Assembly (NCBI RefSeq): GCF_001447785.1
Contig: NW_015164211.1
Span: forward strand, 360,012-423,587
Origin: Gekko japonicus
Taxonomy: Eukaryota
Direction: 5' to 3'
Length of the DNA stretch: 63,576 nt
The notes beneath the pieces were generated by a model, which did not search any database, was not told the origin of the DNA, and saw nothing but the letters and a program-made list of their open reading frames with translations. A program made the translations under genes and the position numbers. Positions 32,017 through 58,444 of this stretch are shown one piece after another; position 1 is the stretch's first letter; every line of letters starts with the position of its first letter.

Positions 32017-32033
32017 GCGGCTCAGGCACCAAG

Positions 32034-32094
32034 ATGTCCAACCGAGTGCTCTGCCGGGAGGCCAGCCACGCCGGCAGCTGGTACACGGCCTCAG
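32034..32094 (+). CDS. MEMO1: MEMO1 coding exon 1 ([21 protein letters not shown])
   Basis: Matches human [21 protein letters not shown]; donor GTATGG. Confidence 0.97.
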
Positions 32095-37525: not shown

Positions 37526-37745
37526 GAACAAAGTTTGAGTCCGGTGGCACGTTTAAGACCAATAGAGCTTTATTCAAGGTGTGAGCTTTTGTGTGCATGC
37601 ACACGTCTTCAGACATCTGGTGTTTAAGGCACTGTGCATGCGCACCAAAGTTCACACCTTGAATAGAGCTTTGGTCTTAAAGTTGCCACCGGACTCAAAC
37701 TTTGTTCCACTGCTTCAGACCAACACAGCTGCCCACCTGGATCTA
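37526..37745. mobile_element. Penelope-like element terminal sequences arranged as an inverted repeat (arms 37526-37707); other Penelope ends at ~35290-35410(+) and ~57430-57530(-)
   Basis: GAACAAAGTTTGAGTCCGGTGGCA...TGCCACCGGACTCAAACTTTGTTC; GGTCTTAAAG.TGCCAC and GAAAGCTCA motifs typical of reptile Penelope termini. Confidence 0.7.
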
Positions 37746-39746
37746 TCTGTAATACCATATCTGTGTAACTTTTCAAGTGACTGTTAGTCACTTATAGGTC
37801 ATTAAAGCATATAAATTAGAGCTTCTTTACAACACTTCTAATTATCCTTGGAGTACAATTTGCTTAAACAAGTATTTATAGAACTTAAACTAGTATGTTA
37901 ATTAAGCAATCCTCTTCTGAATTAGTTTCTGGCAGCAGTAGCTCTTGGCACCAGCTAGATACACTGAGCACAATGAAAAAGGATGCTTAGATCAAAGAGG
38001 GTGCTACTTGAATGTAAAGTCTCTCTAAACCTCTGATTTTTGTCACAGTGAGCAACTGAACTTGCTCAGCTATAGAGGGATCAGCCAGCAGACAGGCATT
38101 GGTCCTGGTTGCAGTAGAGGAAAAATCATGCTTCTTGTATGCTGTTCTCACATTGGCTGGGCAGCACTGCAACTGCACCTTTCCATTTCTTAAACGTTGT
38201 TAAGAGACTGAGAATGCTCCACAGGTTTGTGTATTCGACTTGCATGACAATGATTCCATCATTTCCCTTTCTGAGCCAACTATGGGTAGCATATCTGCAC
38301 TGCTATGTTTGTTAATCGTGGTTAGCTCCAAAATACAGTTTGTGACTGTGGTCAGATGTGGTTTCAGACTGATCTGGGCTTATCTCAACTGTGGTTATAA
38401 TAATAACCCTGCCTACTGACAGGAAGCAGTGAGTGAATGGTTGGAATATTGGTTTATGTCGTATTTGTATCAGACATTTGTCTGTCGTTCAATGAAAGGG
38501 GACAGCTGTCACATTGTGTCCCGGCTCAGTCAAAATGTGCAGAGGGGAAGAAGTCCAGTGAGAAGTCCAATAATTTGAGAAACATGACACTCTGGCCCCT
38601 AAGTTAGGATTGCTTCCATCTGCCTTAAATAATAATGGATAATAATATTCTCGCCCATTTTATTCCAACACTTTATTCCCCCTCCCTTTTTTTGTATTCT
38701 TCTGCCCTTAACAGATCATGTACTTGAGATGCTTTCTTACTACTTTAAATAGTTCAGGTCCTAATACAAGTGATAAATAAAAATAAGGCAGTACTCAAAC
38801 TAGTAGCAGCTTGTCAATAGCCCTACTACCTTTTTCTTTAACTTTAATGTAGCTTTTCTGTCTTGATTGTGAGAGATTAAACCTGTTTTTGTTAAAATAT
38901 TTGTATTTAAGGTTGCTAGGTCTTCATTAAAACGACATGGAGCAAAGCAGGACCCACAAGAAAGCTGTAGGCAGGGGACATCGCATTCCCCCGCCTTTGC
39001 TTCCTCCTCTCTCCACCACCCTTTCTGTTACTCTTTCTCCCCCCACACCGCCCTTTTCAGTCACTTTCTCTTTCTCCCCTCCCACAGCCCTTCTCTGTTT
39101 CTCTTTCCCCCTGGCCCATGAGACTCCCAGGGACAGGGTTGGCTTGCTGCTTTCCTCCACCCCTCTACTCAGTGGGCCCAGCCAGATCTGGCTTATGTTG
39201 TGGTAATGAGGCAGCAGCAAAGTGGGGACGTGGGAGGTGGAGGATCCCATTTATTCTCCACCACCTTCCAAGGCAGTGGCAGAGGAGGATTTGGGTCCTT
39301 TGCTGCCTGCCAAATGTCCTCTCACCACTGTCCTGGCCACCCAAGTTGTGAATCTGACAGCAGCTGCCATGGTAGCAGGTTGGGGTATGTGGCAGAGGCT
39401 TCCAGTCCTTCTCACCCACCCTCCACCCAAGGCAGCAGTGGAGGTAGGCAAGTCAGTGGTGGTTTTAGGATGGCGGTTGGTCATAAAGGCTCCTGGTTCA
39501 CTTGGCCTGCTCACTTACAGTGTAGGTTTGGAGGCATTTGCCTGCCTAGACAACTGTTTTCTTTTGTTTTAAACTCCTGTTGTGGTTTGGGATTTTCTGC
39601 AAACCTTGGTGGGGCAAGTTTGTTCGATCTCCCTTCTCTCATTGTGCCCCTTATCCACAGATAGAAGTATCTGCAGATGGGGCCATGTTGACTATTAGAT
39701 ATACTGATTATTTGGTGCTGTCATGTTCAGACATCTCTCTTTGTAG

Positions 39747-39828
39747 GACCTCAACTGAGTGCGCAACTAGAAGGTTGGCTTTCTCAAGTACAATCTACAA
39801 AAAGACCTGCTAGAGCCATTATTGCACC
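39747..39828 (+). CDS. MEMO1: MEMO1 coding exon 2 ([27 protein letters not shown])
   Basis: Translation identity; TAG acceptor and GTAAGT donor. Confidence 0.97.
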
Positions 39829-41034
39829 GTAAGTTTCATATTTTTTTTGGAAAAAAATGTTTTTAATGTTTTAAAATGCTGCCCAGGTGTTAATGCTCAG
39901 CCATTTCTGATGTGAAATTGGTGTTTTCAGGGAAGTCCCAAAGTGTTTTTAACCTGTTCACCCACCTTATTTTCTCCTAATCAATTGATGTTCTAATGCC
40001 ATTTTTGAAAATCTGTCTTTTTCTTTTGAGAAGTGATCTCTATATACTGTTAGCAACATGTGGTCTCCATCTGCGGATATCTAAATCTGTAGATTGCATC
40101 CACATGGACACTAAAGAGATTTTTCTACAAACTTGGGGGACCCCCTAAGTTTGCCAAAAAATCTGACTTAAAAAAAAACAGGTGGGGTTTTTTAAATTCC
40201 CCCCCCCCCCAAAAAAAAACCCTTACCTCCAGGGGCATGGTGGCCTGGGAGCAACCACTGGGCCTAAGTTGCGGGCACAGCTGGCCAGGAGCCACGCTCA
40301 GCCTGGTGGAGGCGCAGCAGCCTGGGAGCTGCACCAGACTTGACACTGGGGGGGGGGATATGGAATCCCCCTCCCGCTGACACAGTGGCAGAGGATGCCT
40401 GGCAGCTGTGTCGGACCCAGCAGCGGAAGAGGAGGATGCCGGGCTCAAGAGACATGGCAGAATCCCCCCCCCTCCACAAATCTCCTACCACTGAGCTGCA
40501 AGGCGAATCACCAGTGATCGAGGGAGGGATCCCCCCTCATGAGTATCGGGATTTCCCACCTGCAAGTATCGTGGTTCCCCACTTGTTACCATATGGTATT
40601 GTTGGTGGCTGTTTGGTAGTGTCACTGACAACTTGGACTAAAGACAGAAGTCGTTGTCTGAACCTGTGAATATCTTCATTTCAAGCTTCTCCCCCAGTTG
40701 CCGAAGGGGAAGTGCTTATTATTAGGTTAAAAGTAGTAAGTAAAATAATAGTAAAAAGCAGTTCTTACAAGCCTTTTCTTTGTCTTGCAAATATAACTTG
40801 GGAAAGTTATGAACATGTGGACAGGTAAGGAAGCAAGGTGCTCCTTGATGGTCAGTGAACCGGGTGAACGTGCTGCTTATATCTACATGTGTTTCAAGTA
40901 TCTGTCAGATGTATGATTGTTAGTACTTTCTTAACAGTTCTTCTCTATACAGACCATTAGTATCTTGGTAGTTTTTGTTATACTAAAGATGTAAAAGTTA
41001 ATTTTAAGCAAAGTCCTCTTTTTTTTTTTAATAG

Positions 41035-41103
41035 ACATGCAGGTTACACTTACTGTGGGTCTTGTGCAGCTCATGCTTATAAACAAGTGGATCCTTCAAT
41101 CAC
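41035..41103 (+). CDS. MEMO1: MEMO1 coding exon 3 ([23 protein letters not shown])
   Basis: Translation identity; canonical splice sites; 69-nt symmetric exon. Confidence 0.97.
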
Positions 41104-42736
41104 GTAAGTTAACATTAGAAGATTGTTATACCAAGTAAGATAGAACTTAATTGGTTCTTGGTCCTGCCTCCAAGGTTGCAGGAGATTATTTTAAATACAA
41201 GACAGGCTGGGTTTCTCAGAGGTGTGTCAGATCAGCCGTGGTAAACATAATTGAAATAAGTTGCTGCTTGTCATACAGTCTGTTGGGAGAGGGACAGGTT
41301 TGAATTGCAAATCTGAGGGACAGTCTGTTTTGCAAGAAACACGAGTATAGGTTAATACTTTATGAAGTCTTAATGCCAACTTAAATATTGCTTGATTTTT
41401 ACACACTTGCACATAGTCTGCCAATCTTGCATTGCTGTTGCCAGCAGGGTGCTTCATTGTATGGATACCTGACCATGGGCATCGAAACAAACAGTATGTG
41501 TACAAAACACTTTTTAAGAGGGTGGAGTAATTTTATCACACCAGTGCTGCTCCTTTGCTTGCACTAACATGCTTAGAATTGCAATGCCCTTTGTGGAACC
41601 AGCTTCACACACACACACTCTTTGTGATTCAGCATCTCCTGTGCAATGTTGCTGTAAAGACACCTTGGAAAATAGGAAAGAACAAGAAGAGGGCCCCGCG
41701 ATACTTGCGGGGGGGGGGAGTATTCCCCCTGGCTCCTGGCCTGCAGAAGCAGGAGGAACTCAGGGCTGAGGAGGAAGCGGCCACAGGTAAGCTCCCCCCA
41801 CCCCCAGCTCCAGCGGTGAGGCCTGAGCGGCTTCNNNNNNNNNNNNNNNNNNNNNNNNNNNNNNNNNNNNNNNNNNNNNNNNNNNNNNNNNNNNNNNNNN
41901 NNNNNNNNGTGCCCCCCCCCCCAGCCCCAAGCCTTCCCCCATCCCCCCCCCAGCACTGGGGGTGAAGCCTGAGTGGCTCCCAGCCACTGGGCCTCCCCCC
42001 CCCAACGGCCAGAGTGTTCCCTGCGCATGCGCAGGAAACTCTCTCTGCCCCCCAAGTGCCCATGATGTGCGGATTTAGATATCCACGCGGAGGGGGCAAC
42101 TTGGCTATTAGATATATAGATACATCAAAGGCAGGCCATCCTGATTCTATCTTATTTCTTTACCTATGAATCCTTTTGCTCAAATGTAGCAGTACTTGGA
42201 AACTAAAGTTTACCTATATATGAAAATGTGAACATTCATGAGGTGGAACCATGAACCTCTATATTTATTACCATTAGTTTGCCTTTCTGACTGGGACCCA
42301 AGGCAGATTACAAATATGATTTTACAATTAAATGTATTAGTAAGTGTTTTGCAAGATATGTTAACATTTGAATCTATCAGCAGAGATTCTGAGTAAGAGA
42401 AAAACGTGTAGTTTTGCTAGGATTCTAGAACAGGGAGCATACCCCAAACTATCCATGCAAACATATCTAAGGCAACAGAACAGTTAGTGTAGCTTGCAAC
42501 TATATCTATTATCGTAACCAGACAATCAGTGAAGGGAAGTAGAAATCCCCTCCTAAACTGAACTATTACACCACAGCTCTGTGCCTTCTAAAAGAAAGCC
42601 CGCTTGAACAATTCTGTTTTGTGCATTCTGCAAAACAATAGAAACATGGAAGCTGTCATGGAGAACAGTGAATAGTGGTTTTCTGTGGAGTAGATGGACT
42701 ATCACTAATACTGCATCTCTCCTATTATCGTTATAG

Positions 42737-42849
42737 ACGGAGAATCTTCATTCTTGGGCCTTCCCATCATGTGCCCCTTTCCCGATGTGCACTTTCCAGT
42801 GTGGATATATATAGAACCCCTCTATATGATCTGCGAATTGATCAAAAGG
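42737..42849 (+). CDS. MEMO1: MEMO1 coding exon 4 ([37 protein letters not shown])
   Basis: Translation identity; canonical splice sites. Confidence 0.98.
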
Positions 42850-44372
42850 GTAACTGTTTAATGCCATACACAACTCTTATTGTACAGGGACAATACTAGC
42901 TTTCGAAGATATTAATTATTCTTCTTTGAATGTTAACTTTCATGTGAAAATTATGGTAATCTTAGACTTTCTACTGATTGCTTAAAATAGGATATGTCAC
43001 TGAAGGCACTGCCAAGCTTGATTGTTACTTAAGCAAAATAATTGTTCAGAATTCCTCTAGTAACACTTCTTCTGTCACCCTTCATCCTGTTCAATTGATG
43101 TCTTGCAGAGTATAAGCTTTCCTGCAGAGCCAGTTTGGTGTAGTGCTTAAGAGCGGCGGACTCTAATCTGGAGAACTGGGTTCGATTCCCCACTTCCCCA
43201 CTGGAAGCTAGCTCGGTGACCTTAGGCAAGTCACAGCACTCTCAGCCTGATCATAAGCATAGCTCGCCACTCAGTGGTGTGGAAAAAGAGCTACAGCTTC
43301 AGCAGCCAAACATTCCCTTCCAGGATCTCCTGGCTGTTCTACACATAATGCCATATGATAATTAATTAAGTTTAGCTTTCCTACAAATGTACAGAATTAA
43401 CATGGGGCACTTTTTAAAATGTGATTTATTAAACAGAAGTCAAAATAAACATGTTAAATCTGATGACATTCTATTTAGGGTATCTGAAAACTTTCCAGAA
43501 AGTTTTCTAATTTTATTTTTTCTGGAAAAATCACTCTGATGCCTGGACCTTAATTTTTGACAGAAAGGAATTTTGTGTATGGATTGAATAGACTCTTGAA
43601 GATGGCTGCTTGAGATATAGTTGTAGTAGCATAGGGTGTGCTGTGGGTTAGATGGCACTGCATCATATTCAGTTACTTCCCTAAAGCAACCAATCATTAC
43701 AATCTGTCAGAAAATCCTGTACCACAGATCCCCTTGTGGTAGCCGTAGGTCTGTCTTTATGGCCAGTTACACCAGAATCCTATTCTCCTATCTACTAGAA
43801 GAGCAAGGGCAAAAAGCCTGTTGTAATTTTATGCTTATACAGACTGACTATCTGTGACAAACATGCTGTTCACAAAGAAAATAAAATCTCACTGTTTTGG
43901 GTTGCTAAATAATGACACGAGGCCTTAAATTTTGCTGCTGTTTTTAGGAGGTTTGCTGTTAAATTTTATATTAAAAAAAGACAATTATTTTAATTTCGTG
44001 AGGAGTTTCCAGAATTTTGAGTTTACAGGTGTTTTATTCATGACCAGGATGATAGTAGGAATATTTTGTAAAAGCTAACAGTAAGTTTTATCGATAAGAA
44101 TACTCCTAAATAACCTTATTAATTTTAATGTTACACTGAAGTCATTATGTATTTAAATGCAGAAAGTTGGCATTAATCCAGACAGAGCAGGGCAATTGTT
44201 TTCTCTTAATACAGTCTGTTATGACGCTAGTTTCAGATTTGTCCCGGTTTGTCCTAGTTTCAAATTAGAATGCATCTAACCTAAAGTTTACAGTGTGAGA
44301 GCTTCTAACTTAGTTGTTGCATCTATTTGCTGTTACAGCTTTTTAGTAAAACTAATATGTCCAGCTTTTCAG

Positions 44373-44484
44373 TTTATGCAGATCTATGGAAGACTGGAAT
44401 GTTTGAACGCATGTCTCTGCAAACGGATGAAGACGAACACAGTATTGAAATGCATTTGCCTTATACTGCTAAAGCCATGGAAAG
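44373..44484 (+). CDS. MEMO1: MEMO1 coding exon 5 ([38 protein letters not shown])
   Basis: Translation identity; canonical splice sites. Confidence 0.98.
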
Positions 44485-44985
44485 GTACGCTAACATTGCA
44501 TACCTGATTCTCCTGCTTTTGAGCTGTTAGTACTCTTATATTTATTGTCCTGTATCTCCTGCTTCTTTTTCTATCCAACTTAAAAGGACTGGCAGAAATC
44601 AATGAGGCACAATTTAAGTTTGCATAACTTAATACAGTTGTAGGATTTAGAATCTTTTCATATTTTCTCACTCATATTTACCTGTATGCGAATGAGAACT
44701 ACCAAACAAAGAGCAGTGTGGCTGTATTAAATGGAGATGTTGAGAGAATAAGTGGATCTCAGTCTTCTATGCAAAACATTCTGTTCTTTACCCTAAACGT
44801 AAGGCTGCACTTCTTCAGTGGCTGAAATACCATTAAGTAATTTGTGTGATGGTACACAACACTTTTCTAAAGTATAGTCTTGAAGTTGCCATTCTCGGGG
44901 TATCTGCTTTTGATACTGAGACAAAAAAAAAAAGCATACGTATTGATAGTATGATTTATGGTCTAAAAGTAAGATACTCAGTATA

Positions 44986-45326
44986 GGTAAAGGTTTCCCT
45001 TGCTTGAAAGCCAGTCGAATCCAACTCTAGAGGGCAGTGCTCATCTCCGTTTCCAAGCCGAAGAGCCAGCTCTGTCCGAAGACATTTCTGTGGTCATGTG
45101 GCCGGCATGACTAAACGCCGAGGTGCATGGAACACTGTTACCTTCCCACCGAAGCGGTACCTATTTATCAACTTGCAATTTCTTGCTTTTGAATTGCTAG
45201 GTTGGCAGGAACTGGGGCCAGAGAGAGGAGCTCACTCCATCACACGGCATTAGGGTCTCGAACTGCCGAGCTACAGACCTTCTGGTCAGCAGCTCAGCGT
45301 CTTAACCTCTAAGCCACCACAGCCCC
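44986..45326 (-). mobile_element. Full-length Sauria SINE
   Basis: tRNA-like head, ACCTTT tail; perfect 15-bp TSD AAGATACTCAGTATA (44971-44985, 45327-45341). Confidence 0.88.
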
Positions 45327-46171
45327 AAGATACTCAGTATAAAAGCCAAAACAAACTTACATGGCTTTTAAAACGATAGAAGAACTGTTGCATGCAGAAT
45401 ATCCCAGATTCAACTCCCAGCATCTCCAGTGAAAAAGAATTTCGGTAGTAGGTGATGTGAAATTCTTGACACCCTGGAGAGCTGTTGCCAGTCAAAGTAA
45501 ACAGTACTCACCTTGACTCAGTAGAAGGCAGCCTTATGTTAGGCCAAATGCTCTATTTTACTGCAGATGGCTAACTATAATTTTAACGTGAGTTCTGGCC
45601 AGCATTTACGGAGGTCTTGTTTGAACCTAGGAGTCCAGTAATGGAGACCACACATGTGTTTTTCTTAAACAAATAATCTTTTACTGAAGGATTTCAATAT
45701 CAAGCATACACAAAACATCAGTCTCACTTCACAAGCACACAAGTTTCCTTAAGCGTTACAGAAAGAAATAAAAATAGATTATCAGTTACTTGGTGGGAGA
45801 TAGATGTATTTCGGTTGATACTTGCCTGGTTCCAGATGTCTTGTCTGTTGCAATGGTGATTGGAAGGGAAGGGAAAGGTCCCTGGGGTTAATTGCTCATC
45901 CACAATGCTTAGAACGAGCTAGCTATTGTGGGTGAATGTCTCTGGCTGCGCAGCCCAGAGAGATTCAAACAAAGAGCTTTAACTCAAGGAAAGATGGGGG
46001 GGGGGTAGAATGTGGCCAGCCAGCAGCCCCGAACTGAAAGCGTGCTGAACGTTTTATAGTGAAATCTCCAGGTTGGTGGCATCTTGCCATACTGTGGTCC
46101 CACCTTTCTACAGATCCATCCCATTAACTCTCCTGATTGGTGCATGTGAAAAGGGGCAGGTATACCTATGG

Positions 46172-46451
46172 TATACCCGGGTGCCGCATGATGGAGTGAG
46201 CTCCCGTCTCTAGTTCCAGCTCCTGCCAACCTAGCAGTTCGAATGCAAGAAATTGCAAGTAGATAAATAGGTACCACTTCAGTGGGAAGGTAACAGCGTT
46301 CTGTGCGCCTTGGTGTTTAGTCATGCCGGCCACATGACCACGGAAACGTCTTCGGACAGCGCTGGCTCTTCGGCTTTGAAACGGAGATGAGCACCGCAAC
46401 CCTAGAGTCGGATTCGACTGGCTTTCGAGCAAGGGAACCTTTACCTTTACT
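46172..46451 (+). mobile_element. 5'-truncated Sauria SINE
   Basis: ACCTTTACCTTT tail; 11-bp TSD TATACCTATGG (46161-46171, 46452-46462). Confidence 0.88.
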
Positions 46452-47943
46452 TATACCTATGGGAGGGCCAACATTTGAAATTCTATTCTCTATCTCATGG
46501 AATGGTATTTGGCTAGGTGTTAAGTCTTATCTTCCTGTTGCTCCTTTGAAGTACAGATGAAGCTGGCTCTCCCAGGCACACAGGATGCTGTAAACAGGAT
46601 GCTGCTATACAAATGCAGATTCAGTCCATGCCTCCTGACATCTCATATCTCCAGTAATGGGGGATCTTCTTCTCAAAGTTGTTGTTTCTGATCACAATGG
46701 CAAACCATCTGCTTCTTGCTCCCACAATGCCTTGCTAGCTGAATGTGTGCNNNNNNNNNNNNNNNNNNNNNNNNNNNNNNNNNNNNNNNNNNNNNNNNNN
46801 NNNNNNNNNNNNNNNNNNNNNNNNNNNNNNNNNNNNNNNNNNNNNNNNNNNNNNNNNNNNNNNNNNNNNNNNNNNNNNNNNNNNNNNNNNNNNNNNNNNN
46901 NNNNNNNNNNNNNNNNNNNNNNNNNNNNNNNNNNNNNNNNNNNNNNNNNNNNNNNNNNNNNNNNNNNNNNNNNNNNNNNNNNNNNNNNNNNNNNNNNNNN
47001 NNNNNNNNNNNNNNNNNNNNNNNNNNNNNNNNNNNNNNNNNNNNNNNNNNNNNNNNNNNNNNNNNNNNNNNNNNNNNNNNNNNNNNNNNNNNNNNNNNNN
47101 NNNNNNNNNNNNNNNGAAATCTCTCTCTCTCACTATAGGTGTTGCAAACAGCTTTCTTTGGCTTATGGTATACAAATGAATGTGCACAGTCCATGTGTGT
47201 TGCTTGTGTATCAGATATAAAAACATAAATAAGTCTGTCTCATAACACTTATGTGCAAAATAGAAATAGCAAGAGTTATGGAAATAGGGGGGAAGTATTT
47301 TTATGCTGCTTAGTGCCAAGTAGAAATTCAGTCTGCTGTGTTCTTATAGGTGTAGTCCTTGATATGATATATATAAAAGCCCTGGCATATTGGCACTTTC
47401 CAGATCTCCCATTGGCTATTCTATGCACTCCATCAGCCATTGGTCCATCAACCGCCACTCAAGAGTACTCACATGCCATTGGCTGAGTGCTGGGTCCACT
47501 CCTTTCTCCCACCCATTGGCAGGCTGGCCATAAACTGCCAAAACGGTTCTCTCTCCTAACGAAAACACTTCTCCTGCTTGGCTCCTCCATGGCTAGCTGG
47601 CTACTGAGGTGGGCCAGCGGCTGTCAAACCATTCTCTTCTCCTCCTTGGCTCACTTTTCCCCTTGGCAACCAAGCTTGGTTCTGTCAGTAAAAAGGTGGG
47701 GGAGGAGGCCCTTTTCAGGCCTACTTTGGCCTTTGTGGGAAACTGTGGCCAGTCCTGACTAGGGTTGCCAGCTCCAGATTGGGAAATTCCTGGAGCCAGA
47801 GTTTGGGGAGGGAAGAGGCCTCAGCCGAATAGAGTCCACCCTCCAAAGCAGTTATTTTCTCCAGGGGGAGAGAGAGAAATCTGTTGTCTGGAGTTCAGTT
47901 GTGATACCAAACGATACCACAGCCAGTGTGGTGTAGCAGTTCG

Positions 47944-48528
47944 TATTGAGTGCAGTAAAGAAGAAGCTGGAGACCAACTGGTGATGAAGGTGCATAAAGT
48001 TTACTTAGAGATAATGGTGAATATTTACACAGAGATATACAGACTGTCTTACAGCATAGCGTGCCTTAGTTGGAGAGAACTAAGTCCCCCACCCAGCTTA
48101 TCAAGCTGATAGCTTAAATACTAACCCCAGCCAATCACTAACAGGATAAACTAATTTCCTACTCCAACAATGCTAGAAGAGTAACACCTGGTAGTTTAAC
48201 ACCTGGCTGTAATTGCCTTAACCACTTAGCATGACAGCTAAGACTTACACATAGATCATACTGATCTAGATCCAGTAACCAATGTTCCCTCTAAGCTGAG
48301 TTAGTGTGAGCTAGCTCACAGTTTTCTAGCCTCCAGCTCACACATTTTTGTGTTAGCTCAGGAAGGATGGCTCCAGAGCAAACTAATTTATGCAGCAGCC
48401 AAATCGCTTGCTCACAACTTTAATGCCAGTAGCTCACAAAATAGAATTTTTGCTCACAAGTCTCCAGAGCTTAGAGGGAGCATTGCCAGTAACTGCTTGC
48501 TACCTCAACCTAGACATATATCTCAATA
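47944..48528. mobile_element. Solo-LTR-like element inserted in a SINE
   Basis: Inverted termini TATTGAG...CTCAATA (variant of TGTTGAG...CTCAACA); 5-bp TSD GTTCG; the SINE sequence resumes on the other side. Confidence 0.7.
48280..48485. mobile_element. hAT MITE (206 bp) nested in the LTR-like element; second copy at 51667-51872
   Basis: TIRs CAATGTTCCCTCTAAGCT / AGCTTAGAGGGAGCATTG; perfect 8-bp TSD CCAGTAAC. Confidence 0.9.
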
Positions 48529-48892
48529 GTTCGCACTTCAGAGCAGGGTCTGGCAGACCCAGATTCTTCCTGTGGAAGCTGAATGGGTGATTTTGGACCA
48601 GTCACAGACTTTCAGCCTAACCTACCTCACAGGGTTGTTGTGCAGATTGAAAGGAGAAGAGGAGAATGATGTGAGCTGCTTTGGTCCCCACTGCAGAGAA
48701 AGACTGTACTTTTCCTCCAGGGGAACCATTGTGGCCAATCTCCAGGTGAGGGCTGGAGATCACTCAGAATTACAACTGCTTTTCAGATGGCAGAGATCGG
48801 TTCCCCTGTTTCATTATACCCTGCTGAGGTGGCCACCCTATGACAGCCAGTGTAACGTAGCAGTTAGTGCTTCAAAGCAGGGTCTACCAGAC

Positions 48893-49127
48893 CCAGGTTC
48901 TTGCTGTGGAAACTGAGTGGCTGATTTCGGACCAGTCACCCAAGTTCTTGCTGTGGAAACTGAGTGGCTGATTTCGGACCAGTCACCCAAGTTCTTGCTG
49001 TGGAAACTGAGTGGCTGATTTCGGACCAGTCACCCAAGTTCTTGCTGTGGAAACTGAGTGGCTGATTTCGGACCAGTCACCCAAGTTCTTGCTGTGGAAA
49101 CTGAGTGGGTGATTTCGGACCAGTCAC
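48893..49127 (+). repeat. 47-bp minisatellite, 5 copies, inside a SINE
   Basis: CCAAGTTCTTGCTGTGGAAACTGAGTGGCTGATTTCGGACCAGTCAC at 48893, 48940, 48987, 49034, 49081. Confidence 0.95.
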
Positions 49128-51156
49128 AGACTTTTGGCCTAACCTACCTCACAGGTCAGAAGGGGGAGAGGAGAATGGTGTAAGCTGCTTTGGTCGCCAC
49201 TGCAGAGAAGACTGTACTCTTCTTAGGTAGAGGCTGCAGGGAGGGGGGAGGAGATGGAAAGCTGAAGTCAGAGGGGAAGATAAAGGTAGGTTGATGGTTG
49301 GCTGGGAAGGAGATACGGTTGCCACCTCCAGGTTGGGAAATTCCTGGAGATTTGAGGGGTGGATCCCGGAGAGCGTGAGGTTTGAGGAGGGGTGGGACCT
49401 CAGACAGATACAATGCCATAGACGCCACCCTCCAAACTAGCCATTTCCTCCTGGGGAACCATTGTAGCCAAACTCCAGGTGAGGGCTGGAGATCACTCAG
49501 AATTACAACTGCTCTTCAGGTGGTGGAGATCAGTTCCTCTGGAGAAAATGGTGGTCTCTGGCTCATTATACCCTGATGAAGTTGCCACAGCAAATTGATG
49601 CTGAGTGCCCCCAGGCCGGGGTACCCACCCAGAGCCTCTTTTTAGAGCTCGTTTTTAGTTCCACAACGGGCCTTATTCCTAGTCTCAGGTAATTTCTGAG
49701 ATAGCCTCAGCCCTGTGTCTTCAGGTTACAGAAACTGGAAGTCGTGCTCCAAGAATATCCGTTGTAACTAACCATCAAAGAATTTTGACACTTAGAACGT
49801 TATGATTGATCCTAGTAAAAGGTTGTCCACAGTCAGGCTCAAAGCCATCCCCAGAAGCTCTCTGTATCTTGTCCCAGATGCCACTGAACCAGAAAAGCTG
49901 CACAGCTCCTTCTGGAACCTGGACAACCAGTCCTACCTCAGGTGAAGCCGCCCACACCAGGCAAGACTGGGGGGAGAGCAAAGCCAGCTGAGAATATTGG
50001 AATGGCTAGGGAGAAGGAGAAAATCCCAGGGATGCAGGCGGGTTGAGCAGTCACACTGCAACGGGCTTCCAGGAGGCAGACAGCCCCGCTTGTGACTCCC
50101 ACTGCTGCAAGAGGCTCAGGGAGGGCTGGTTCGGGTTCATGGGGCTTAGAGGACCCTGGGCTAAGGAAACAACCCCAGGACCTGTCAATCCCGGGTGGCT
50201 CCCTCCTGGGAGTGAGGTCTGAGGCTCACCCTGCCTTGGCCTCTCCAAGCAGGTCTCCTTGGGTGGTGGGATGGGTGTGTCAAACGCCAAGGGTGGGATG
50301 GGGAGGTGAAGTTTTAGGTGAGGTCAGGGCCAGTAGGACCAAGTGACAGACATGCCTCCTTGAAGGGCAGTTGTCTGCCCCAGTGACCCCTCGGCGGCAG
50401 CTGCAGACATTCAGCAGAGGGACAGCTTGGTAGGCCAAGAGGGTGGTGGGTTAAAAGGAAGCTCTGATCAGGAAGCCAAGGAAGAAGAAAGCCTTGAGGA
50501 CTCATGGGTGGAGAATGGAGTCACTCAGGCAGGAGGAGGAGGAAAAGGGTGAGCCAAACCCTCTCCCCCCCTCTATTCTGAGGCTTGTGGAGCATCTGGA
50601 GTCAGGACTGGTGGGACAGCGGAAGGTGGTGTACCTCCTGGGAACACATTGCGGGTGTGACAAAGGTATTATTTTTGTGTTTGGTGTTCCTGTAACAAGA
50701 GAGGCGATTGTAGGCGTCTGAGGTGTATTGAAATTGGATTGGCTGAATATGTACTTTTAACCAATAAGAGAAAGCACTAAGGCAGCCAGTCACAAGGAAT
50801 AACAGTGCACAGGAAGATAATTCCAGTCAAGCATTAGTAAATTACCAAAGCATCAGTCTGGGCAGAAGCAACCCATTCACACTTAATGGTAGTCTAGCCG
50901 GAAAAGAAGATCTATTCAGCAAACCTTAACATACATACAGTGAGTTTTGTCAGAAGACCTTCTGGATTGGCACTGAGGATGTCTCATGGAAGTTTCTGGG
51001 CCTCACTTTAATACAGAATTTTGAATAACTTGATTAAACTTAAAATAGCATAACAGTGCAAATGAAACATATTTTTTTACAGATAAAGTTTGCTGCTTGT
51101 GACAACATCATGTCCTGGACCTTTATAAATATAAGTGTTTTGTTTTGTTTTTTAAG

Positions 51157-51299
51157 CCATAAGGATGAGTTTACCATTGTTCCTGTATTAGTCGGAGCAC
51201 TGAGTGAGACGAAAGAACAGGAATTTGGAAAACTCTTCAGCAAATATTTAGCAGATCCTTGTAATCTCTTTGTGGTTTCCTCAGACTTCTGCCATTGGG
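51157..51299 (+). CDS. MEMO1: MEMO1 coding exon 6 ([48 protein letters not shown])
   Basis: Translation identity; AAG acceptor and GTAAGT donor. Confidence 0.98.
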
Positions 51300-52350
51300 G
51301 TAAGTTGTTATTGGCCATAAAGAGCTGGCTGTATGCACGTATTTAAAACAGGCCACTTTAAACTGAAATACGGTTTGACAAACCTACCCTTTCTACAGAA
51401 AGCTAAAATTCAATTTGGCAATTCTAGAAAATTGTCTGAAAGGAGTATTTTCACAGCTTGGTAAAACGTTTCCTTTGCAAACAGAAATAAGAACTTTTTC
51501 CTCTGTTATTTACGGGATGCAAAGGATTGTAGAATTTTCCAAATATTTGCATAGCAAATCTGTATTTATGGTGATTGTTGGTCATATTTGCTGCTCTCTC
51601 CTTAGGTTAGAATTGCAAAGCCAGCAAAGATTCATGCAGATGCCAACCAAGTTTTGGGGGTGGGGGCAGTGTTTCCTCTAAGCTGAGTTAGTGTGAGTTA
51701 GCTCACAGTTTTTAAGCCTCTGACTCACATATTTTTGTCTTAGCTCAGGAAGGATGGCTCCAGAGCAAACTAATTTATGCAGTAGCCAAATCGCTCGCTC
51801 ACAACTTTAATGCTAGTAGCTCACAAAGTAGAATTTTTGCTCACAAGACTCCACAGCTTAGAGGGAACATTAGAGTTTATATTCTAGATTTTACTGTAAA
51901 AATAACTAGTAATACCTTACTATATTTCTATGGAGCTGATAGCAAAGCTGAAGAGCACTGCATTTCTTACAAGCTTTGGTGATTGTGTAGTTAGCCAAGG
52001 AAGAGAGAGACGTGCCCTTCATATTTCTGGTATATTAAGTACTATTTGTACAGTGTCAAGTGTACATGATGATTTTCAGAATAACAACAGGTGACAAATC
52101 TCTGCACCATGAGTTTACTATATTTCTATGGAGCTGATAGCAAATAGTTGCTTGTTTCTCATTTGGAATTACTCAATTACTGTCCAATTACTCCATTACA
52201 GTACTAGCACAGTACAGAATGAAGATTGCTTTAAGAGATTGTTACAGAATTTGTTTTGCCATCTGTTTACCTGCTTTTGTAATTACTTTTTTCATCTTTG
52301 CCTCCAGTTAGAAGTTTCATTATTTATTTGTCACAACTTTTGTCTTTAAG

Positions 52351-52433
52351 GTCAGCGGTTCATAAGTGCTGAAAATGATGAACACCTAGATAAAATGGTA
52401 AGTGCTGAAAATGATGAACACCTAGATAAAATG
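52351..52433 (+). CDS. MEMO1: MEMO1 coding exon 7, aberrant: GQRF-ISAEND-EHLDKM (donor after 52397) or with an extra VSAENDEHLDKM (donor after 52433)
   Basis: Both ends (GQRF, EHLDKM) match orthologues, but the middle [16 protein letters not shown] is absent and replaced by a 36-bp tandem repeat. Confidence 0.8.
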
Positions 52434-55155
52434 GTAAGTGTTGAAAATGATGAAATACAACTCCAGTTAGCTTCTCCTGAAAATTTTGAATGCATCCAGA
52501 ATTTAATTGAAGAGTTCTCATATCCCCTTTCATAAAATAAGTACTCTATTATTTGTCAGCTGTCAAGAAAATTCTACCAGATTTTTTGCTACTTGAATGT
52601 TGGCTAGCCAATGAAGCGGTCAAGGGCACTCACTAGGGCAGTACAGTAATAAGTCTTCCAATCCCCTCTGTACCCTTGTTTGTCTGAGAGATAAAGCCAG
52701 CAACAGCCAATCTGGGCCTGTGGAGCCTTGGAGGGGAAGGAGCAGAGGGGGAAAGAGCTGTTTAACAAGTTTGAGAGGGTTTTAGAGTTTCTTTAGGCAG
52801 GGCAGGGATCTTCCCCTTTCTCCATTCACTTCAGGTAGAAGGGGGCTGTTTAGCATGGTGACCTAGTGTGGTACACACTGGTTTAGGGTTCTCATTTGTA
52901 GTCTTTCAGTGTTACTTGAAAGCTACGGGGCAGGTGGAGTTATGTAGCTTAAAAAGGCTCTAGTGAAGAATTTAAAAGACTGAGAAGCCTATTGGGAAAG
53001 TAATAGCTCTCAAAGGCCAAAGTAATATGGCAGTTATTGGCATTCTCTTCACTGAGAGAGAGGGAGGGGAAGACGCGTGCACACACGTGCACACACAGGT
53101 ATATATTTTTTTTTTAAAAAAATGGTTGCCAGCCTCCTGAAGATCTGGAATTACAACTGATGTACAGATGACACAGATCAGTTCACCTGGAGAACATGGC
53201 TGCTTTGGAGCATGACATTATACCACTCTAAGGTTCCCAAACCCTGCCCTCCCCAAGCTCCACCGCCAAATCTCCAGAAATGTCCCAACCCACAGTTGGC
53301 AACTCTAATACATATCCACGTTATAGATACACATGCGATATGTATACAAAAGGAAAAAACTGTATCGCCAAAGCTCAATTTCTCCCTGTTTGTATAAACT
53401 TGGTCCTGAACCTTCAGTTTGCTTTCCCCTCACAGTGAAAGAAACCATTTTTTCTTGTATTTGATCTCTGTTCTCCTAACTGTTAAGGATGGTCCAGGTA
53501 ACAATTGGGTTCTACCATCCCAGAGAAGAGGGTATCTCAGAAGCTCCATCATAGATTACCTCAGAAGTGGGTAGTGGTAGATAGTGCCGAGTGTTGGCTG
53601 TCCAGTAAATAAACATATCTCTGGCTTCTTAGGTGTGCTTGGTGATATGATGGGGAATTGTGGTTGCTATGGGAAGTAATCCTTAGTCAACCCCCAAATC
53701 ATTGGGATTGTGAAAACAGGTGCACTACACGGGGGGGGGGGGGGTTTACTGGCGTCATGCCACCCCAACTTATCACAATCACCCATTCTTCTGCTAGTAG
53801 AAGTGGTTGATAGGAGAGAGGAGTGTTTTGCCAGATTCCGCCTCCTTCCTTTTGTCCGTGTTCCACATGACATTTTGATTAGGAGGGTACCTGACAGCAG
53901 AGAGTTTCAGGAGGCCACAGGAGACAGCTGGGAGAAGGTGGAGAAGATCTGTCTCCAAGATCCCTGCATTCACAGTCTGTAAGACTGAACCCAGTTGTAT
54001 TCCTCTTAAGTGGCAGACCAGAATGGAGGAGGGGAGAACCATGTATGCCCGCTTGGGAGGAAGGGCAAGATCTTAAAAAGTAAATGTAAAAGCCATACTC
54101 TAAACAACAACGTAAGGATAAATGTGGGGACACCAAAGAGTACTCATGGGAGGGAGTGGAAATACCCCCCCCCCAACATCGTCTCTTGCTTTACCCTCCT
54201 CAACGTTCACATTGTGTGTTTTCCTTCTCCCCTTCCCAACCCTTCCAGTCAGATGTATTCCTCCTCATCCACCCCAAACGAAGCCTTTTTAACTTTATCG
54301 TGTGTCTTTTGCAGTGAATGCATATGTATTGAAAGTTTGTGAAGTAAATCGCATATAGGTAGAAAAAAATACATGTTAATTTTTCAGGTTTTTCTGCCAC
54401 CCAGGGATTAACCCCATATATGCTGAAACATCCTTCCTATTCCTAGATAGCCCCATTGTGCTGATCTTGTTCATGTGCAAAGTGGGGCCATCTTGGGAAT
54501 TGGATACGATATGGTAGGTGATACATAGACTGTATGGCAGTTGTATTGGTGTGTGTGTGTGCATGCTCATCCCTTCTGATTCCTTGACTGATTTCCCCCT
54601 GAATCTTAACCCCTCTCTCTGGGCAGTGCAGGTTTAAATCATCAAATGTCTTTCATATTTCAAAGCAGAAATGCTGCTGCAGGGTATATTTGCTATCCAA
54701 ACATGCACTGGGATCAGTTTCAGGACTTCAAATAAATGACCCAAAACATCTAGGATGCAAGTTGATTTGGGTGTCGTCCAAAGCAGTTTGCTCAACTGCA
54801 GTAATCTTTTCTATACAGTAACATTAAAGAAAGATGCAAGGGACGGGGTCCACAAATCTAAAGTTGCCAGCCATTATTTGTGCTCACTACTGACCCTTCC
54901 CCAAGTCTTCCATTTGTGCCAGACGATCTGTTGGGAAAGAAATGCTCATGTCACACTGGAGCTGAACAGGCAGACGTACAGTGTGTACCTCAGAAATAGT
55001 AAAGGTGCAGAAAAGTGCAACCCAAATGACAGAGTGGCTAGAGATCCCTTCCCTCTGAGAAGGTTAAAGTTTTGTGGCTTTTCAGTGCAATTTTAAGAGA
55101 AGCTACTCTTTTAAAGCCCACTGAATTCAGTGGATTTAGAAGGCCGTAACTGTAA

Positions 55156-55486
55156 GTGGTGGCTCAAGTGGTTAAGACGCTGAACTGCAGGCTGTGGAAG
55201 GTCAGTAGTTCGAGACCCGAGTGCCGCATGACGGAGTGAGCTCCCGTCTCTAGTTCCAGCTCCTGCCAACCTAGCAGTTCGAAAGCAAGAAATTGCAAGT
55301 AGATAAATAGGTAACACTTCGGTGGGAAGGTAACAGCGTTCCGTGCGCCTTGTCATGCGGGCCACATGACCACGGAAACGTCTTCGGACAGCGCTGGCTC
55401 TTTGGCTTTGAAACGGAGATGAGCACCGCAACCCTAGAGTCGGATTCGACTGGCTTTCTAGCAAGGGAACCTTTACCTTCACCTTT
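55156..55486 (+). mobile_element. Near full-length Sauria SINE inserted into a palindromic MITE
   Basis: GTGGCTCAAGTGGTTAAG..GTTCGAGAC head and ACCTTT tail; MITE halves GTGCAATTTTAAG / TTAAGATTGCAC on either side. Confidence 0.85.
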
Positions 55487-56239
55487 AACTCTTATTAAGA
55501 TTGCACTTTAAGTTAGGAGGGAGGCAAACAGGGACAAGATAGAAGAGAGTAAGAGCGTTTTATCAAGTCGTAACTACGTCAGGGCAACCCCATCCATGGG
55601 GCAGTTAAGGCAAAAGAGGAGCAGAGGTGGTTTACCATTGCCTTCCTTTGCTTAGCAACCCCAGTCTTCCTTGGTGGTCTCCCATCCAAGTACTGATGGT
55701 AGTCAGCCTTGCTTAGCTCCTAAATTCTCAGAAGCGCAAGCTAATCTGGGCTGTTTGGGCTGCTGGACAATATAAAGGTTTATAACATTCAGTAGTTGTA
55801 TGGAGAGGTATGAGGGAAATGAGGGGAAATACTAGAAGTTGTGGTTACTTAACGCAACTGATCAACAGTAAGTTCAGAACAGGAAAAATTATTTTTTACA
55901 CAAAAATGTAGAGTTCAGTGATGGCTGGTACCTTTGGCTTTTAAAATAAGGTTTGACAGATGCACTATTGTGTCTGTCACAGCTAATTTCCCAACTGGTA
56001 TAGTCCCTTTCTGTATATGATGTGGCAATGTCAAACCCAGTAAAAGTTTTTCTGGATTCATACTAGACAGTACTACGCTTTTTATCTGATGACACTAGAT
56101 TTTGTTGATAGCTTATCTCCCTACAAGTAAGGCTTTGATTTTTAATATTAGGAAGAGATGAAATAGGTGTGTATTATGGGCAAATGCAGTCCTAAATAAT
56201 AACTTAGAAGATGTAACTGTATTTTGATATTCTTCTTAG

Positions 56240-56344
56240 GGTATGAGCATTATAGAGCAGCTTGATCCTGTGTCCTTTAGCAATTACTTGAAGAAATACC
56301 ATAATACAATATGTGGAAGACATCCCATTGGCGTTTTACTAAAT
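56240..56344 (+). CDS. MEMO1: MEMO1 coding exon 8 ([35 protein letters not shown])
   Basis: Translation identity; canonical splice sites. Confidence 0.98.
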
Positions 56345-57548
56345 GTAAGTGCTGTTGAATGAATTTCTAATGCAGTAGTTCCCCGACCCTAGCGCATCCT
56401 ACCCTCTCTTGTGCAAAATTCTTCTGAGGTCTATACAGGCAGATGGGACCTGTGCGAAGGGTATGCTGCACAGTCTGTGGGCCTGCCAGTGAATTAATTA
56501 GTTGGGATTATTCCTGACAATTGGTGCAATATTACATGTTAGGATAGGAGGGGAGGCACTGCTTCCTTTGCTAGTGCAAGGGCCGGGAAATTTCCATTGG
56601 AGGATGGGCAGGTGGAAAAAGATGGCCAACCCTTTCCCTCGTTCTCTTTTGCAAATGCACCAGCCATCTCAAGTTGTGCTAGAAGCTTCTCCCCACCACC
56701 ACCACCACCACCACTATTCTGAACTGGGCTTCAGAAGCCTACCTGGCAAGTGGGGGGGGGTGTGTTTTGAGGGTGTTCATAGGAAGAGAATTGGAGGCTC
56801 CAGGAGTGATTAGCTGCCCGTTGTCCTTTTTAATGCTGCCTGTGCATCTTCTATTATGTCAATAAATGTCAAATTGAGGAAGTACATTCGTGCAGGAAAT
56901 CTAGTTTGGTTTTTGTGTTAAATTTTTTTAATCAAAAACATAAGGATTTTAGAGCAATATAGAAGATGGTTTAAAATTTTTGTATGAACTGTACAAACTT
57001 AAGCAAGTGTCCGTTTATTTTGCTTAGTTTGCATGGTTCTGTATTTGATTGTCATGTTCAGTCAGCTGTGCAGGGCACTGATGCTCTGTCCCATGACTAC
57101 CAGATATCCTGCTAGTGTTGTCTTTCTCTTTCTTCCTGCCCCCAAAGTTCAGACTCTCCACCGTAGCTCTTAACCTTCATAGCCATGACGAGCCAACGTG
57201 AGCTCTTGTGGCGGCTGCATGCTTGTGCAGAGTTATGGAATGCATCGCACAGCCCTGTCTGTTACCCCCTTCCAAATTATTTTGGAACGTAACATTGATT
57301 TTGGACTCCTGCCTGTGGTTGGCTGTGCAAGAGGAGGTTTCTACAATAAAAGCATTGCTTCATGGAAACCTTTTTGTCTGCTCCTTTGAGCCAGGGGGCT
57401 GGCCCCCTAGCAATCTCTGCCTGTAGATCTGCAGTAGAAAAGAGCAAGAGTCCAGTAGCTCTTTAAAGGACTAACAAAATATGTGGCATGGTATGAGCTT
57501 TCATAAATCACTGCTCACTTCTTCAGATAGATCTGCAGTTCGTTTCAG

Positions 57549-57619
57549 TTGTTGTTGTTCAGTCGCACAGTCGAGTCCGACTCTTCGCGACCCCATGGAC
57601 CAGATCACGCCAGGCCTTC
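57549..57619 (-). mobile_element. BovB/RTE 3'-end fragment
   Basis: Nearly identical to 25036-25100, including the (CAA)n tail. Confidence 0.8.
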
Positions 57620-58312
57620 ATTTCAGTAGAGGTGTATATTGCTCAGGTTGTACTGCTCTTCACAACTAGTCATCTGCTTTCCTCCTACCTCCCATTTATT
57701 CATTTATTATTTTTAGATCCCGTTTTTCTTCTATCATGAGGGCTCAAGCAGGCTGAATTCTGGAAGGTTTCCCTAGCAGGCACTATCCATGCACATACCA
57801 GCTTATCTTTAGCAAGGCTGCTGTATCATGTACCTTCCAACCATACCCTGTTTCAGGGACTGTGGTCACTGGGGAGCAATGTTTTACTACAGGGATAGCT
57901 AAAAGGCTTTACTGGGACATAGGCAGTTCCTCTGACTAAAGAGAACTTAGTATAGGATTTCCTATGAAGGAAGGTGCATTTAAAGACACTCAGGGTAGAA
58001 AGAAAAAATGTTCTGAATTAAAATGTTTGTTTGTTTTTAAGTACCCAAGGGTACACTTTTATTGTTTTCCATTATACACTACAAACATATATAGAAACCA
58101 ACAACATAAAACTACCACTAACAAACATAAAACATATAACAGGAGGCATATTCCATCTTCTATCCTTCAATTATCTAATTATTACATTTCAGATCTCATT
58201 ATCTATTTTGCTAGCTTATCTTTTCTGCAATGAAAATGTTTGTTAAGAGTAGATGATGCAGTGGCACTATAAAACACCTTGTAAAACTGAACTTTTCACT
58301 TTTTCTGTCTAG

Positions 58313-58444
58313 GCTATCACAGAGCTCCAGAAGAACGGAATGAACATGAGCTTCTCGTTTTTGAATTATGCCCAGTCAAGCCAGTGCCGAAACTGGCAAG
58401 ACAGCTCAGTGAGTTATGCAGCAGGAGCACTAATGGTCCACTGA
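58313..58444 (+). CDS. MEMO1: MEMO1 last coding exon (AITELQKNGMNMSFSFLNYAQSSQCRNWQDSSVSYAAGALMVH*)
   Basis: Translation identity; TAG acceptor; TGA at 58442-58444. Confidence 0.98.
   Translation, partial: AITELQKNGMNMSFSFLNYAQSSQCRNWQDSSVSYAAGALMVH

What the first reader, a model, noticed from the sequence alone, without database searches (positions are those of the whole stretch)
52351..52454. MEMO1 exon 7 rebuilt by a 36-bp duplication across the splice donor: 16 conserved codons lost, two in-frame donors gained
Seen: after GT CAG CGG TTC (GQRF), the unit TAAGTGCTGAAAATGATGAACACCTAGATAAAATGG occurs at 52363 and 52399, with a partial third copy at 52435. The unit joins intron start sequence to the exon's last codons (EHLDKM). 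There are two perfect ATG|GTAAGT donors, giving a 47-nt exon (protein 287 aa) or an 83-nt exon (299 aa). Known: the orthologous exon is 77 nt and encodes [26 protein letters not shown] in a 297-aa protein that is otherwise almost invariant here. The missing stretch (human residues ~198-213) lies next to the D189/H192/R196 pocket and includes R198, reported to contribute to ErbB2 phosphopeptide binding. Inference: either intron sequence has been exonised to replace part of a very conserved protein while keeping the frame with both donors, or this is a gap-filling or mis-assembly artefact driven by the shared ATGATGAA microhomology. An artefact is at least as likely in this gapped assembly.
Basis: partly seen in the sequence, partly recalled or inferred. 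Interest (0 to 1): 0.8.

Follow-up and report, generated by a model that had tools for sequence, protein, structure and literature searches.

The report
Rebuilt MEMO1 exon, probably misassembled
In this draft gecko-type genome, one exon of the highly conserved, essential gene MEMO1 is written with a 36-base piece repeated in place of 16 conserved codons; this is most likely an assembly fault, not a real change in the protein, but no sequencing reads could be laid to prove it.

Summary
A 36-nt unit stands at 52363-52398 and 52399-52434 (identical), with a 20-nt partial copy at 52435-54 (one C>T). It joins intron-start sequence to the last codons of MEMO1 exon 7. Two ATG|GTAAGT donors keep the frame: a 47-nt exon gives 287 aa, an 83-nt exon 299 aa. 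The canonical exon is 77 nt (297 aa).

The lost stretch, R198-I213, has no insertion or deletion in 24 bilaterian MEMO1 proteins. It is canonical in three other squamates and holds six invariant residues. All other exons here are nearly identical to Anolis, so the gene is under strong constraint.

No protein carrying the rebuilt exon turned up.

My estimates, by inference only:
- About 0.7: a local error of a short-read assembly, probably seeded by a real, harmless 36-nt slippage duplication across the donor.
- About 0.2: a real but rare or heterozygous damaged allele.
- About 0.07: a fixed, working rebuilt exon.

Interest is low unless reads show the rebuilt form. The scan had not noted this feature before on other DNA. 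Earlier notes list other damaged conserved genes in this assembly.

The parts
51157..51299 (+). MEMO1 exon 6 (143 nt), ending ...SSDFCHW plus the first base of the Gly194 codon.
   Evidence: 51188-51298 matches human MEMO1 chain 3bcz_A 153-189 with 35 of 37 residues identical; 100% identical to Anolis P0309 over the exon.
52349..52350 (+). Acceptor AG of exon 7, after a pyrimidine-rich tract
52351..52362 (+). Retained canonical start of exon 7 (GT CAG CGG TTC A: Gly-Gln-Arg-Phe plus the first base of the next codon)
52362..52363 (+). Junction TTCA|TAAG, where the canonical exon breaks off and intron-start sequence begins. The two sides share no bases.
   Evidence: compared with the canonical peptide
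52363..52398 (+). Copy 1 of the 36-nt unit: 20 nt of intron start (TAAGTGCTGAAAATGATGAA), then 15 nt of exon end (CACCTAGATAAAATG) and the G of the donor
52399..52434 (+). Copy 2 of the 36-nt unit, identical to copy 1
52435..52454 (+). Partial copy 3, which is the intron start in its original place (TAAGTGTTGAAAATGATGAA; T instead of C at 52441)
52351..52397 (+). Exon 7, short form (47 nt): G-QRFISAENDEHLDKM; protein of 287 aa
52351..52433 (+). Exon 7, long form (83 nt): G-QRFISAENDEHLDKMVSAENDEHLDKM; protein of 299 aa
52398..52403 (+). Donor 1, GTAAGT
52434..52439 (+). Donor 2, GTAAGT
56240..56344 (+). MEMO1 exon 8 (105 nt), 35 of 35 residues identical to human MEMO1
32034..58444 (+). Whole MEMO1 coding span. 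Exons: 1 at 32034-32094, 2 at 39747-39828, 3 at 41035-41103, 4 at 42737-42849, 5 at 44373-44484, 6 at 51157-51299, 7 as above, 8 at 56240-56344, 9 at 58313-58444 (with stop).
   Evidence: local tblastn with database MEMO1 proteins on the window pieces beside 51148-51187; splice sites read directly

Best explanation
The exon 7 written in this window is not the animal's real exon. It is a local error of a short-read draft assembly.

The most likely course has two steps. First, the real locus keeps the canonical 77-nt exon and also carries a genuine 36-nt slippage duplication of [last 15 nt of the exon + donor + first 20 nt of the intron]. That duplication only places a second, decoy donor 36 nt inside the intron. 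Second, this short repeat made a loop in the assembly graph. The assembler or gap filler went round the loop once too often and joined the result directly to the truncated left flank at TTCA|TAAG, dropping the roughly 50-nt middle of the exon.

On this reading the real protein is the ordinary 297-aa MEMO1.

Shown: the structure as assembled, its exact frame arithmetic, and the conservation of what is missing. Inferred: that reads would not support the TTCA|TAAG junction.
For: - The lost stretch R198-I213 has no insertion or deletion in 24 MEMO1 proteins from annelid to bird. It holds the invariant residues Y199, D203, G207, I209, S212 and I213.
- The stretch is canonical in about 100 fetched MEMO1 proteins. 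These include the squamates Anolis, Crotalus and Ahaetulla, which share the window's own exon-6 residues.
- Every other exon in the window is identical or nearly identical to Anolis, with no sign of decay. The lesion must therefore be very young or not real.
- Mouse MEMO1 knock-outs die as embryos, and R196 and R198 are named among the residues tested for ErbB2 phosphopeptide binding (PMC7694686).
- In an AlphaFold model of the canonical protein (pLDDT 91), residues 198-208 form an ordered loop after the strand that carries D189 and H192, and 209-213 start the long helix 209-225. The change would disrupt a well-ordered, conserved part of the fold.
- The pattern of the copies fits a loop traversed twice. 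Copies 1 and 2 are identical, and only the copy in the original place differs, by one base.
- The junction TTCA|TAAG shares no bases on its two sides, as a forced join would. The junction GATGAA|CACCTAG has the few shared bases typical of slippage.
- The window looks like a short-read scaffold. It has five N runs of uneven length (14-365), flanked by homopolymer or GC-rich sequence.
- Earlier notes of this scan, unchecked, call it the Japanese gecko draft and list other damaged conserved genes: WDR83, STX10, ABHD3, PHKG1, BTK, PSMB5. The published assembly of that species used SOAPdenovo and SSPACE on Illumina reads (PMC4673495).
Against: - No reads were laid, so nothing here is direct evidence.
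- Both novel features keep the reading frame (unit of 36 nt, net change of -30 or +6 nt). An error would do that by chance only about 1 time in 9.
- There is no N run within 5 kb of the lesion.
- I cannot name the exact step of the assembler that would cut the left flank at TTCA.
- The whole array (92 nt) is about one read length, so a careful assembler could have resolved it.
- That the window comes from the published SOAPdenovo assembly is a lead from earlier AI notes, not something I verified.
Confidence: 0.7

Rival explanations
1. A real but rare or heterozygous damaged allele. One complex replication or repair event (template switching of the FoSTeS/MMBIR kind, or polymerase-theta end joining with templated insertion) replaced 50 nt of the exon with copies of the sequence just downstream. 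The assembler happened to write this haplotype. The animal also carries a normal copy.
For: - The repeated junction GATGAA|CACCTAG shares only about 4 bases with the canonical sequence. A k-mer assembler cannot make such a junction without reads that contain it.
- Deletion plus tandem templated copies of nearby sequence is a known repair scar (established knowledge, not tested here).
- A very young lesion is compatible with the perfect conservation of the other exons.
Against: - A given essential gene carrying such an allele in the one sequenced animal is rare a priori.
- The C,C,T pattern of the three copies needs an extra step.
- The first junction has no microhomology.
- In a graph assembly, the simple canonical arm would be the easier path to write if it were present.
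Confidence: 0.2
2. A fixed, working rebuild. In this species MEMO1 really lacks R198-I213 and uses exonised intron sequence (ISAEND, or ISAENDEHLDKMVSAEND), with two alternative in-frame donors.
For: - Both donors are perfect and both keep the frame.
- The one-base difference between copies suggests some age.
- 20 public runs from 9 studies hold the stretch or part of it, but it is not known whether they cover these 100 bases.
Against: - The stretch has no length change in any of the 24 aligned bilaterian sequences. Exon 7 keeps its 26-residue length in all but a few of the roughly 100 fetched proteins; the exceptions are P0233, P0232 and P0236, annotated models with small length changes at an exon 7 boundary.
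- It holds six invariant residues and part of a long helix.
- The rest of the gecko protein is as constrained as in other squamates.
- No protein with ISAEND words was found among 327 fetched, and a word search with the read-through frame found nothing. These absences are weak evidence because of length limits and clustering.
Confidence: 0.07
3. A pure artefact. Neither the duplication nor any novel junction exists in the animal, and the whole 92-nt array is invented fill.
For: - With no real duplication, the assembled tract (92 nt) is close in length to the expected canonical tract (86 nt), as when a gap of known size is filled with wrong sequence (arithmetic).
- Another array in the same gene has the same look, with identical inner copies and edge copies off by one base: 47 nt x 5 at 48891-49127.
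Against: Overlap- or k-mer-based tools need 15-31 shared bases to join sequences. The junction GATGAA|CACCTAG shares about 4 and occurs twice in identical form. This reading is counted inside the 0.7 given to the best explanation; it is about a quarter of it.
Confidence: 0.18

Closest known systems
Canonical vertebrate MEMO1 (PDB 3BCZ, 7KQ8; Pfam PF01875)
   Same: Exons 1-6, 8 and 9 of the window encode it almost residue for residue. Exon 8 is 35/35 identical to human and the exon 6 tail 35/37. They are identical or nearly identical to Anolis.
   Different: Exon 7 as assembled encodes 16 or 28 residues instead of 26 and lacks R198-I213.
Local duplication, deletion and gap-closing errors of short-read draft assemblies (false duplications, wrong repeat copy number)
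   Same: Perfect short tandem copies. A join without any shared bases. Damage confined to one exon of an otherwise intact, strongly constrained gene. A scaffold with uneven N runs.
   Different: No gap remains next to it, and the change keeps the frame. Whether reads disagree with the assembly was not tested.
Microhomology-mediated tandem duplication and template-switch rearrangements (replication slippage, FoSTeS/MMBIR, templated insertions of polymerase-theta end joining)
   Same: A 36-nt unit bounded by a few shared bases (..TGAA|CAC.. and ..TGAA|ATA..). A deletion replaced by copies of the sequence next to it.
   Different: The first junction has no microhomology, and the copies do not all match the supposed template (C,C,T). 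No evidence here that the event happened in DNA.
Exonisation of intron sequence and tandem alternative donors
   Same: Intron-start bases would be read as codons (ISAEND), and two strong donors lie 36 nt apart in frame.
   Different: Known exonisations add sequence or make minor isoforms. They do not replace the invariant core of an essential protein. No transcript evidence here.

Membership tests
MEMO1 (Memo family, PF01875) | Sequence match of the exons to solved MEMO1 structures and to orthologues | tested here: met
   Exon 8 is 35/35 identical and the exon 6 tail 35/37 identical to 3bcz_A, E about 1e-18. All nine exons were found with database MEMO1 proteins.
MEMO1 (Memo family, PF01875) | Conserved stretch GQRF-RY(S/T)[19 protein letters not shown] of fixed length (26 residues) between CHW and GM | tested here: not met
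   The window reads GQRF-ISAEND-EHLDKM or the 28-residue form. phmmer of the 28 residues finds no MEMO1 in the PDB. The 24 aligned orthologues have no gap in this stretch. Whether this failure is real or an assembly fault is the open question.
MEMO1 (Memo family, PF01875) | Metal and peptide pocket residues H49, H81, D189, H192, C244 | tested here: met
   The exons that carry them are intact: HAGYTY in exon 3, GPSHH in exon 4, SSDFCHW in exon 6, TICGRHP in exon 8. R196 is kept and R198 is lost (residue list from PMC7694686).
Assembly artefact (false local duplication or deletion) | Raw reads or independent assemblies of the same animal disagree with the written sequence | not testable with these tools
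Assembly artefact (false local duplication or deletion) | Short-read scaffold context with closed and open gaps | tested here: met
   Five N runs of 14-365 bases, flanked by homopolymer or GC-rich sequence. The species and its SOAPdenovo/SSPACE origin are a lead only.
Real microhomology-mediated tandem duplication | Unit bounded by short direct repeats, head-to-tail copies | tested here: met
   The unit ends ...GATGAA and is followed by CACCTAG. The sequence after the last copy is ATACA. If the canonical exon ends ...ATTGAA|CAC, up to 4 bases are shared.
Functional exonisation with alternative donors | Transcripts that use the new exon form | not tested
   No RNA reads were laid. No protein with ISAEND words among 327 fetched. 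A word search with the read-through frame found nothing, but it could only see proteins of 34-107 aa.

The most novel reading that the evidence does not exclude
This gecko species really makes MEMO1 without R198-I213. A single template-switch event replaced the invariant loop and helix start beside the metal and phosphopeptide pocket with exonised intron sequence. Two in-frame donors give 287-aa and 299-aa forms, and the protein still works. That would make it a natural deletion experiment on a stretch whose length does not change in the 24 aligned bilaterian sequences and changes in almost none of the others fetched.
Probability: 0.07. Interest if true: 0.75.

Novelty: not a real feature. Interest (0 to 1): 0.2.

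Why it matters
If it is an artefact, as I judge most likely, it matters only as a warning. Gene models and evolutionary analyses drawn from this draft assembly would report a false 287-aa or 299-aa MEMO1 and a false loss of conserved residues.

If the rebuilt exon were real and fixed, it would show that an essential protein, conserved across animals, tolerates loss of a 16-residue invariant segment next to its pocket. That would bear on the still disputed function of that pocket (peptide binding versus metal and redox chemistry).

If it were a real heterozygous allele, it would be an ordinary private loss-of-function variant with an instructive repair scar.

Tried and rejected
- **Reads.** The look-up of sequencing runs listed 24 runs: 20 hold the stretch or part of it (9 studies; organism A and a relative, B), and 4 are raw-read runs of 2026 added by species label. 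Local tblastn was run on the two window pieces beside them.
- **The look-up of encoding contigs.** I tried it on two short open frames next to and across the repeat, hoping to fetch read-derived contigs.
- **Word search with the read-through frame 52350-52532 (61 aa).** No candidate. It could only see proteins of 34-107 aa, so the blank says little.
- **Big protein search with exon 8, then a word search with P0002 region 96-160 and cluster listing.** These gave canonical MEMO1 from many animals, including three squamates. They gave no gecko entry and no protein with the rebuilt exon. Clustering at 90% would hide such a protein inside a canonical cluster, and only 120 of 283 hits and 15 members per cluster are shown.
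- **Third word search.** Left unused. Any canonical squamate representative would already have been listed. A gecko RefSeq model would derive from this same assembly.
- **Joined spliced model.** Protein lengths come from exon-length sums only.
- **PDB search with the 28-residue long form.** Only chance hits.
- **A displaced copy of the canonical exon middle in the introns.** None in the window.
- **ATGATGAA microhomology as the cause of a mis-join.** Rejected, because eight bases are too few for the tools concerned.
- **The sigma-70 promoter scan.** Irrelevant to a eukaryotic gene.

Full report
**What is there**

The window's + strand carries a complete MEMO1 gene. Exon 8 (56240-56344) is 35/35 identical to human MEMO1 (PDB 3bcz_A 216-250). 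The exon 6 tail (51188-51298) is 35/37 identical to chain positions 153-189. Local tblastn with database MEMO1 proteins, plus direct reading of the splice sites, places the exons as follows:

| Exon | Coordinates |
|---|---|
| 1 | 32034-32094 |
| 2 | 39747-39828 |
| 3 | 41035-41103 |
| 4 | 42737-42849 |
| 5 | 44373-44484 |
| 6 | 51157-51299 |
| 7 | from 52351 (see below) |
| 8 | 56240-56344 |
| 9 | 58313-58444 (with stop) |

Exon 7 starts at 52351, after a good acceptor. After GT CAG CGG TTC A (52351-52362), the sequence does not continue with the canonical codons. It reads TAAGTGCTGAAAATGATGAA CACCTAGATAAAATGG twice without any difference (52363-52398 and 52399-52434). Then comes TAAGTGTTGAAAATGATGAA (52435-52454), which runs on into unique intron.

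The unit is therefore 20 nt of intron start, from the second intron base, joined to the last 15 nt of the exon and the donor G. In frame it reads QRFISAENDEHLDKM | VSAENDEHLDKM | VSVENDE....

Two perfect donors ATG|GTAAGT follow positions 52397 and 52433. Exon-length sums give 864 nt (287 aa) or 900 nt (299 aa). A 77-nt exon would give 894 nt (297 aa). A 36-nt perfect repeat is far beyond chance (three copies of the 20-mer against 0.01 expected).

**What is missing, and how unusual that is**

The human chain has 26 residues between the end of exon 6 and the start of exon 8. The big protein search with exon 8, the word search and the cluster listing brought in 327 proteins.

- The stretch reads [26 protein letters not shown] in amniotes.
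- It is canonical in Anolis (P0309), Crotalus (P0303) and Ahaetulla (P0180). These share the window's own squamate exon-6 residues, LSETK and ADPCN.
- An alignment of 24 full-length sequences from annelid, crustaceans, tunicate, lamprey, fishes, frog-type, bird and mammal has no gap in the stretch. The invariant residues are G194, R196, F197, Y199, D203, G207, I209, S212, I213 and D217.
- The assembled exon loses R198-I213, which includes six of these invariant residues.

In an AlphaFold model of a canonical 297-aa protein (pLDDT 91, pTM 0.91), residues 198-208 are an ordered loop just after the strand that carries D189 and H192. Residues 209-225 are a long helix, whose first five residues would be replaced.

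A review lists R196 and R198 among the residues examined for ErbB2 phosphopeptide binding. It also reports embryonic lethality of mouse knock-outs (PMC7694686).

Outside exon 7 the gecko protein is identical or nearly identical to Anolis. The gene is clearly under normal constraint. No displaced copy of the lost stretch lies elsewhere in the window.

**What could not be done**

- The look-up of sequencing runs listed 24 runs. Twenty hold the stretch or part of it (9 studies; organism A and a relative, B), and four are raw-read runs of 2026 added by species label: one DNA and three RNA.
- My one read-laying run covered 51000-56500, so as to include exons 6-8. I did not call again.
- A word search with the read-through frame found nothing, but it could only see short proteins.
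- No fetched protein carries ISAEND-type words. This absence is weak evidence: clustering at 90% would hide such a protein, and the lists are truncated.

The decisive evidence is therefore missing, and what follows is inference.

**Anatomy as evidence**

Write pre = 52351-52362, A = the 20-nt intron start, B = the 16-nt exon end plus G, and X = the missing ~50-nt middle of the exon. The assembly reads pre-A-B-A-B-A'. The canonical locus would read pre-X-B-A'.

Two kinds of new junction occur:

- **A|B (GATGAA|CACCTAG).** It occurs twice in identical form and shares only about four bases with the canonical ..ATTGAA|CACCTAG. No k-mer or overlap tool can make it from canonical reads. It probably exists in real DNA, as an ordinary slippage duplication of the 36-nt segment B-A.
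- **pre|A (TTCA|TAAG).** The two sides share nothing, as a forced join would.

Copies 1 and 2 are identical, and only the copy in the original place differs (C,C,T). This is what one expects if one real copy was traversed twice. A wholly real history would need a duplication, a substitution, a second duplication and a 66-nt deletion, or else a three-switch replication accident plus a further change.

The simplest account is therefore a hybrid. The real locus is pre-X-B-A-B-A', with an intact exon and a decoy donor 36 nt into the intron. On top of it sits an assembly error that replaced X-B by an extra A-B.

Another array in the same gene has the same look: 47 nt x 5 at 48891-49127, with identical inner copies and edge copies off by one base.

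The scaffold has the marks of a short-read assembly: uneven N runs flanked by homopolymers. Earlier notes of this scan, unchecked, name it the Japanese gecko draft and list several other damaged conserved genes. The paper on that genome reports SOAPdenovo and SSPACE on Illumina reads (PMC4673495). I could not verify that the window comes from that assembly.

**Against the artefact reading**

- Both the 36-nt unit and the net change keep the frame, which an error does by chance only about once in nine.
- No N run lies within 5 kb.
- The array is only about one read long.
- I cannot name the exact assembler step that cut the left flank at TTCA.

These points keep a real allele at about 0.2 and a fixed, working rebuild at about 0.07.

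**Comparison with what is known**

As a gene this is plain MEMO1. The only defining feature it fails is the fixed-length conserved stretch of exon 7. That failure is exactly what is in doubt.

As an event it resembles two known things: local errors of short-read drafts, and microhomology-mediated duplication or template switching. It is no new kind of biological system.

**Verdict**

Its open question (exonisation or artefact) is not resolved by direct evidence.
- Indirect evidence favours an assembly fault, probably on top of a real small duplication.
- Interest is low (0.2) unless reads show the rebuilt exon.
- If the rebuilt exon were real and fixed (about 0.07), it would be a striking natural deletion in an essential, nearly invariant protein.

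Noticed in passing
window 48891-49127 (MEMO1 intron 5): A 47-nt unit repeated five times at 98% identity. The three inner copies are identical, and the first and last copies each differ by one base. It is either a young minisatellite or a repeat whose copy number the short-read assembler could not know. The pattern matches the exon 7 array.
   Followed up: partly
window 32006-32098: The N-terminal extension of the 361-aa Anolis UniProt MEMO1 model (P0309) matches the window at 90% in a frame that overlaps exon 1 and its 5' flank. This probably reflects nucleotide conservation around the start codon and an over-extended Anolis model, not a real coding extension.
   Followed up: no
window 247-260, 489-522, 14176-14443, 41835-41908, 46751-47115: Five N runs of uneven length, several flanked by poly-G/poly-C or GC-rich sequence. 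This is typical of drop-outs in a short-read scaffold. One lies in MEMO1 intron 3 and one in intron 5. The N runs were not filled or looked up.
   Followed up: no
(runs X1-X8): Several small runs guessed to be RNA hold 57-68% of the sampled words of a stretch that is about 94% intron. They are either DNA or RNA libraries rich in unspliced transcripts. They would be good material for checking the exon 7 region.
   Followed up: no
database proteins P0278 (Anatidae, 287 aa) and P0267/P0268 (turtles, 299 aa): Annotated MEMO1 isoforms of 287 and 299 aa exist in other animals, but their exon 7 is canonical. Their lengths come from other ends of the protein, so the length match with the gecko forms is a coincidence.
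   Followed up: partly
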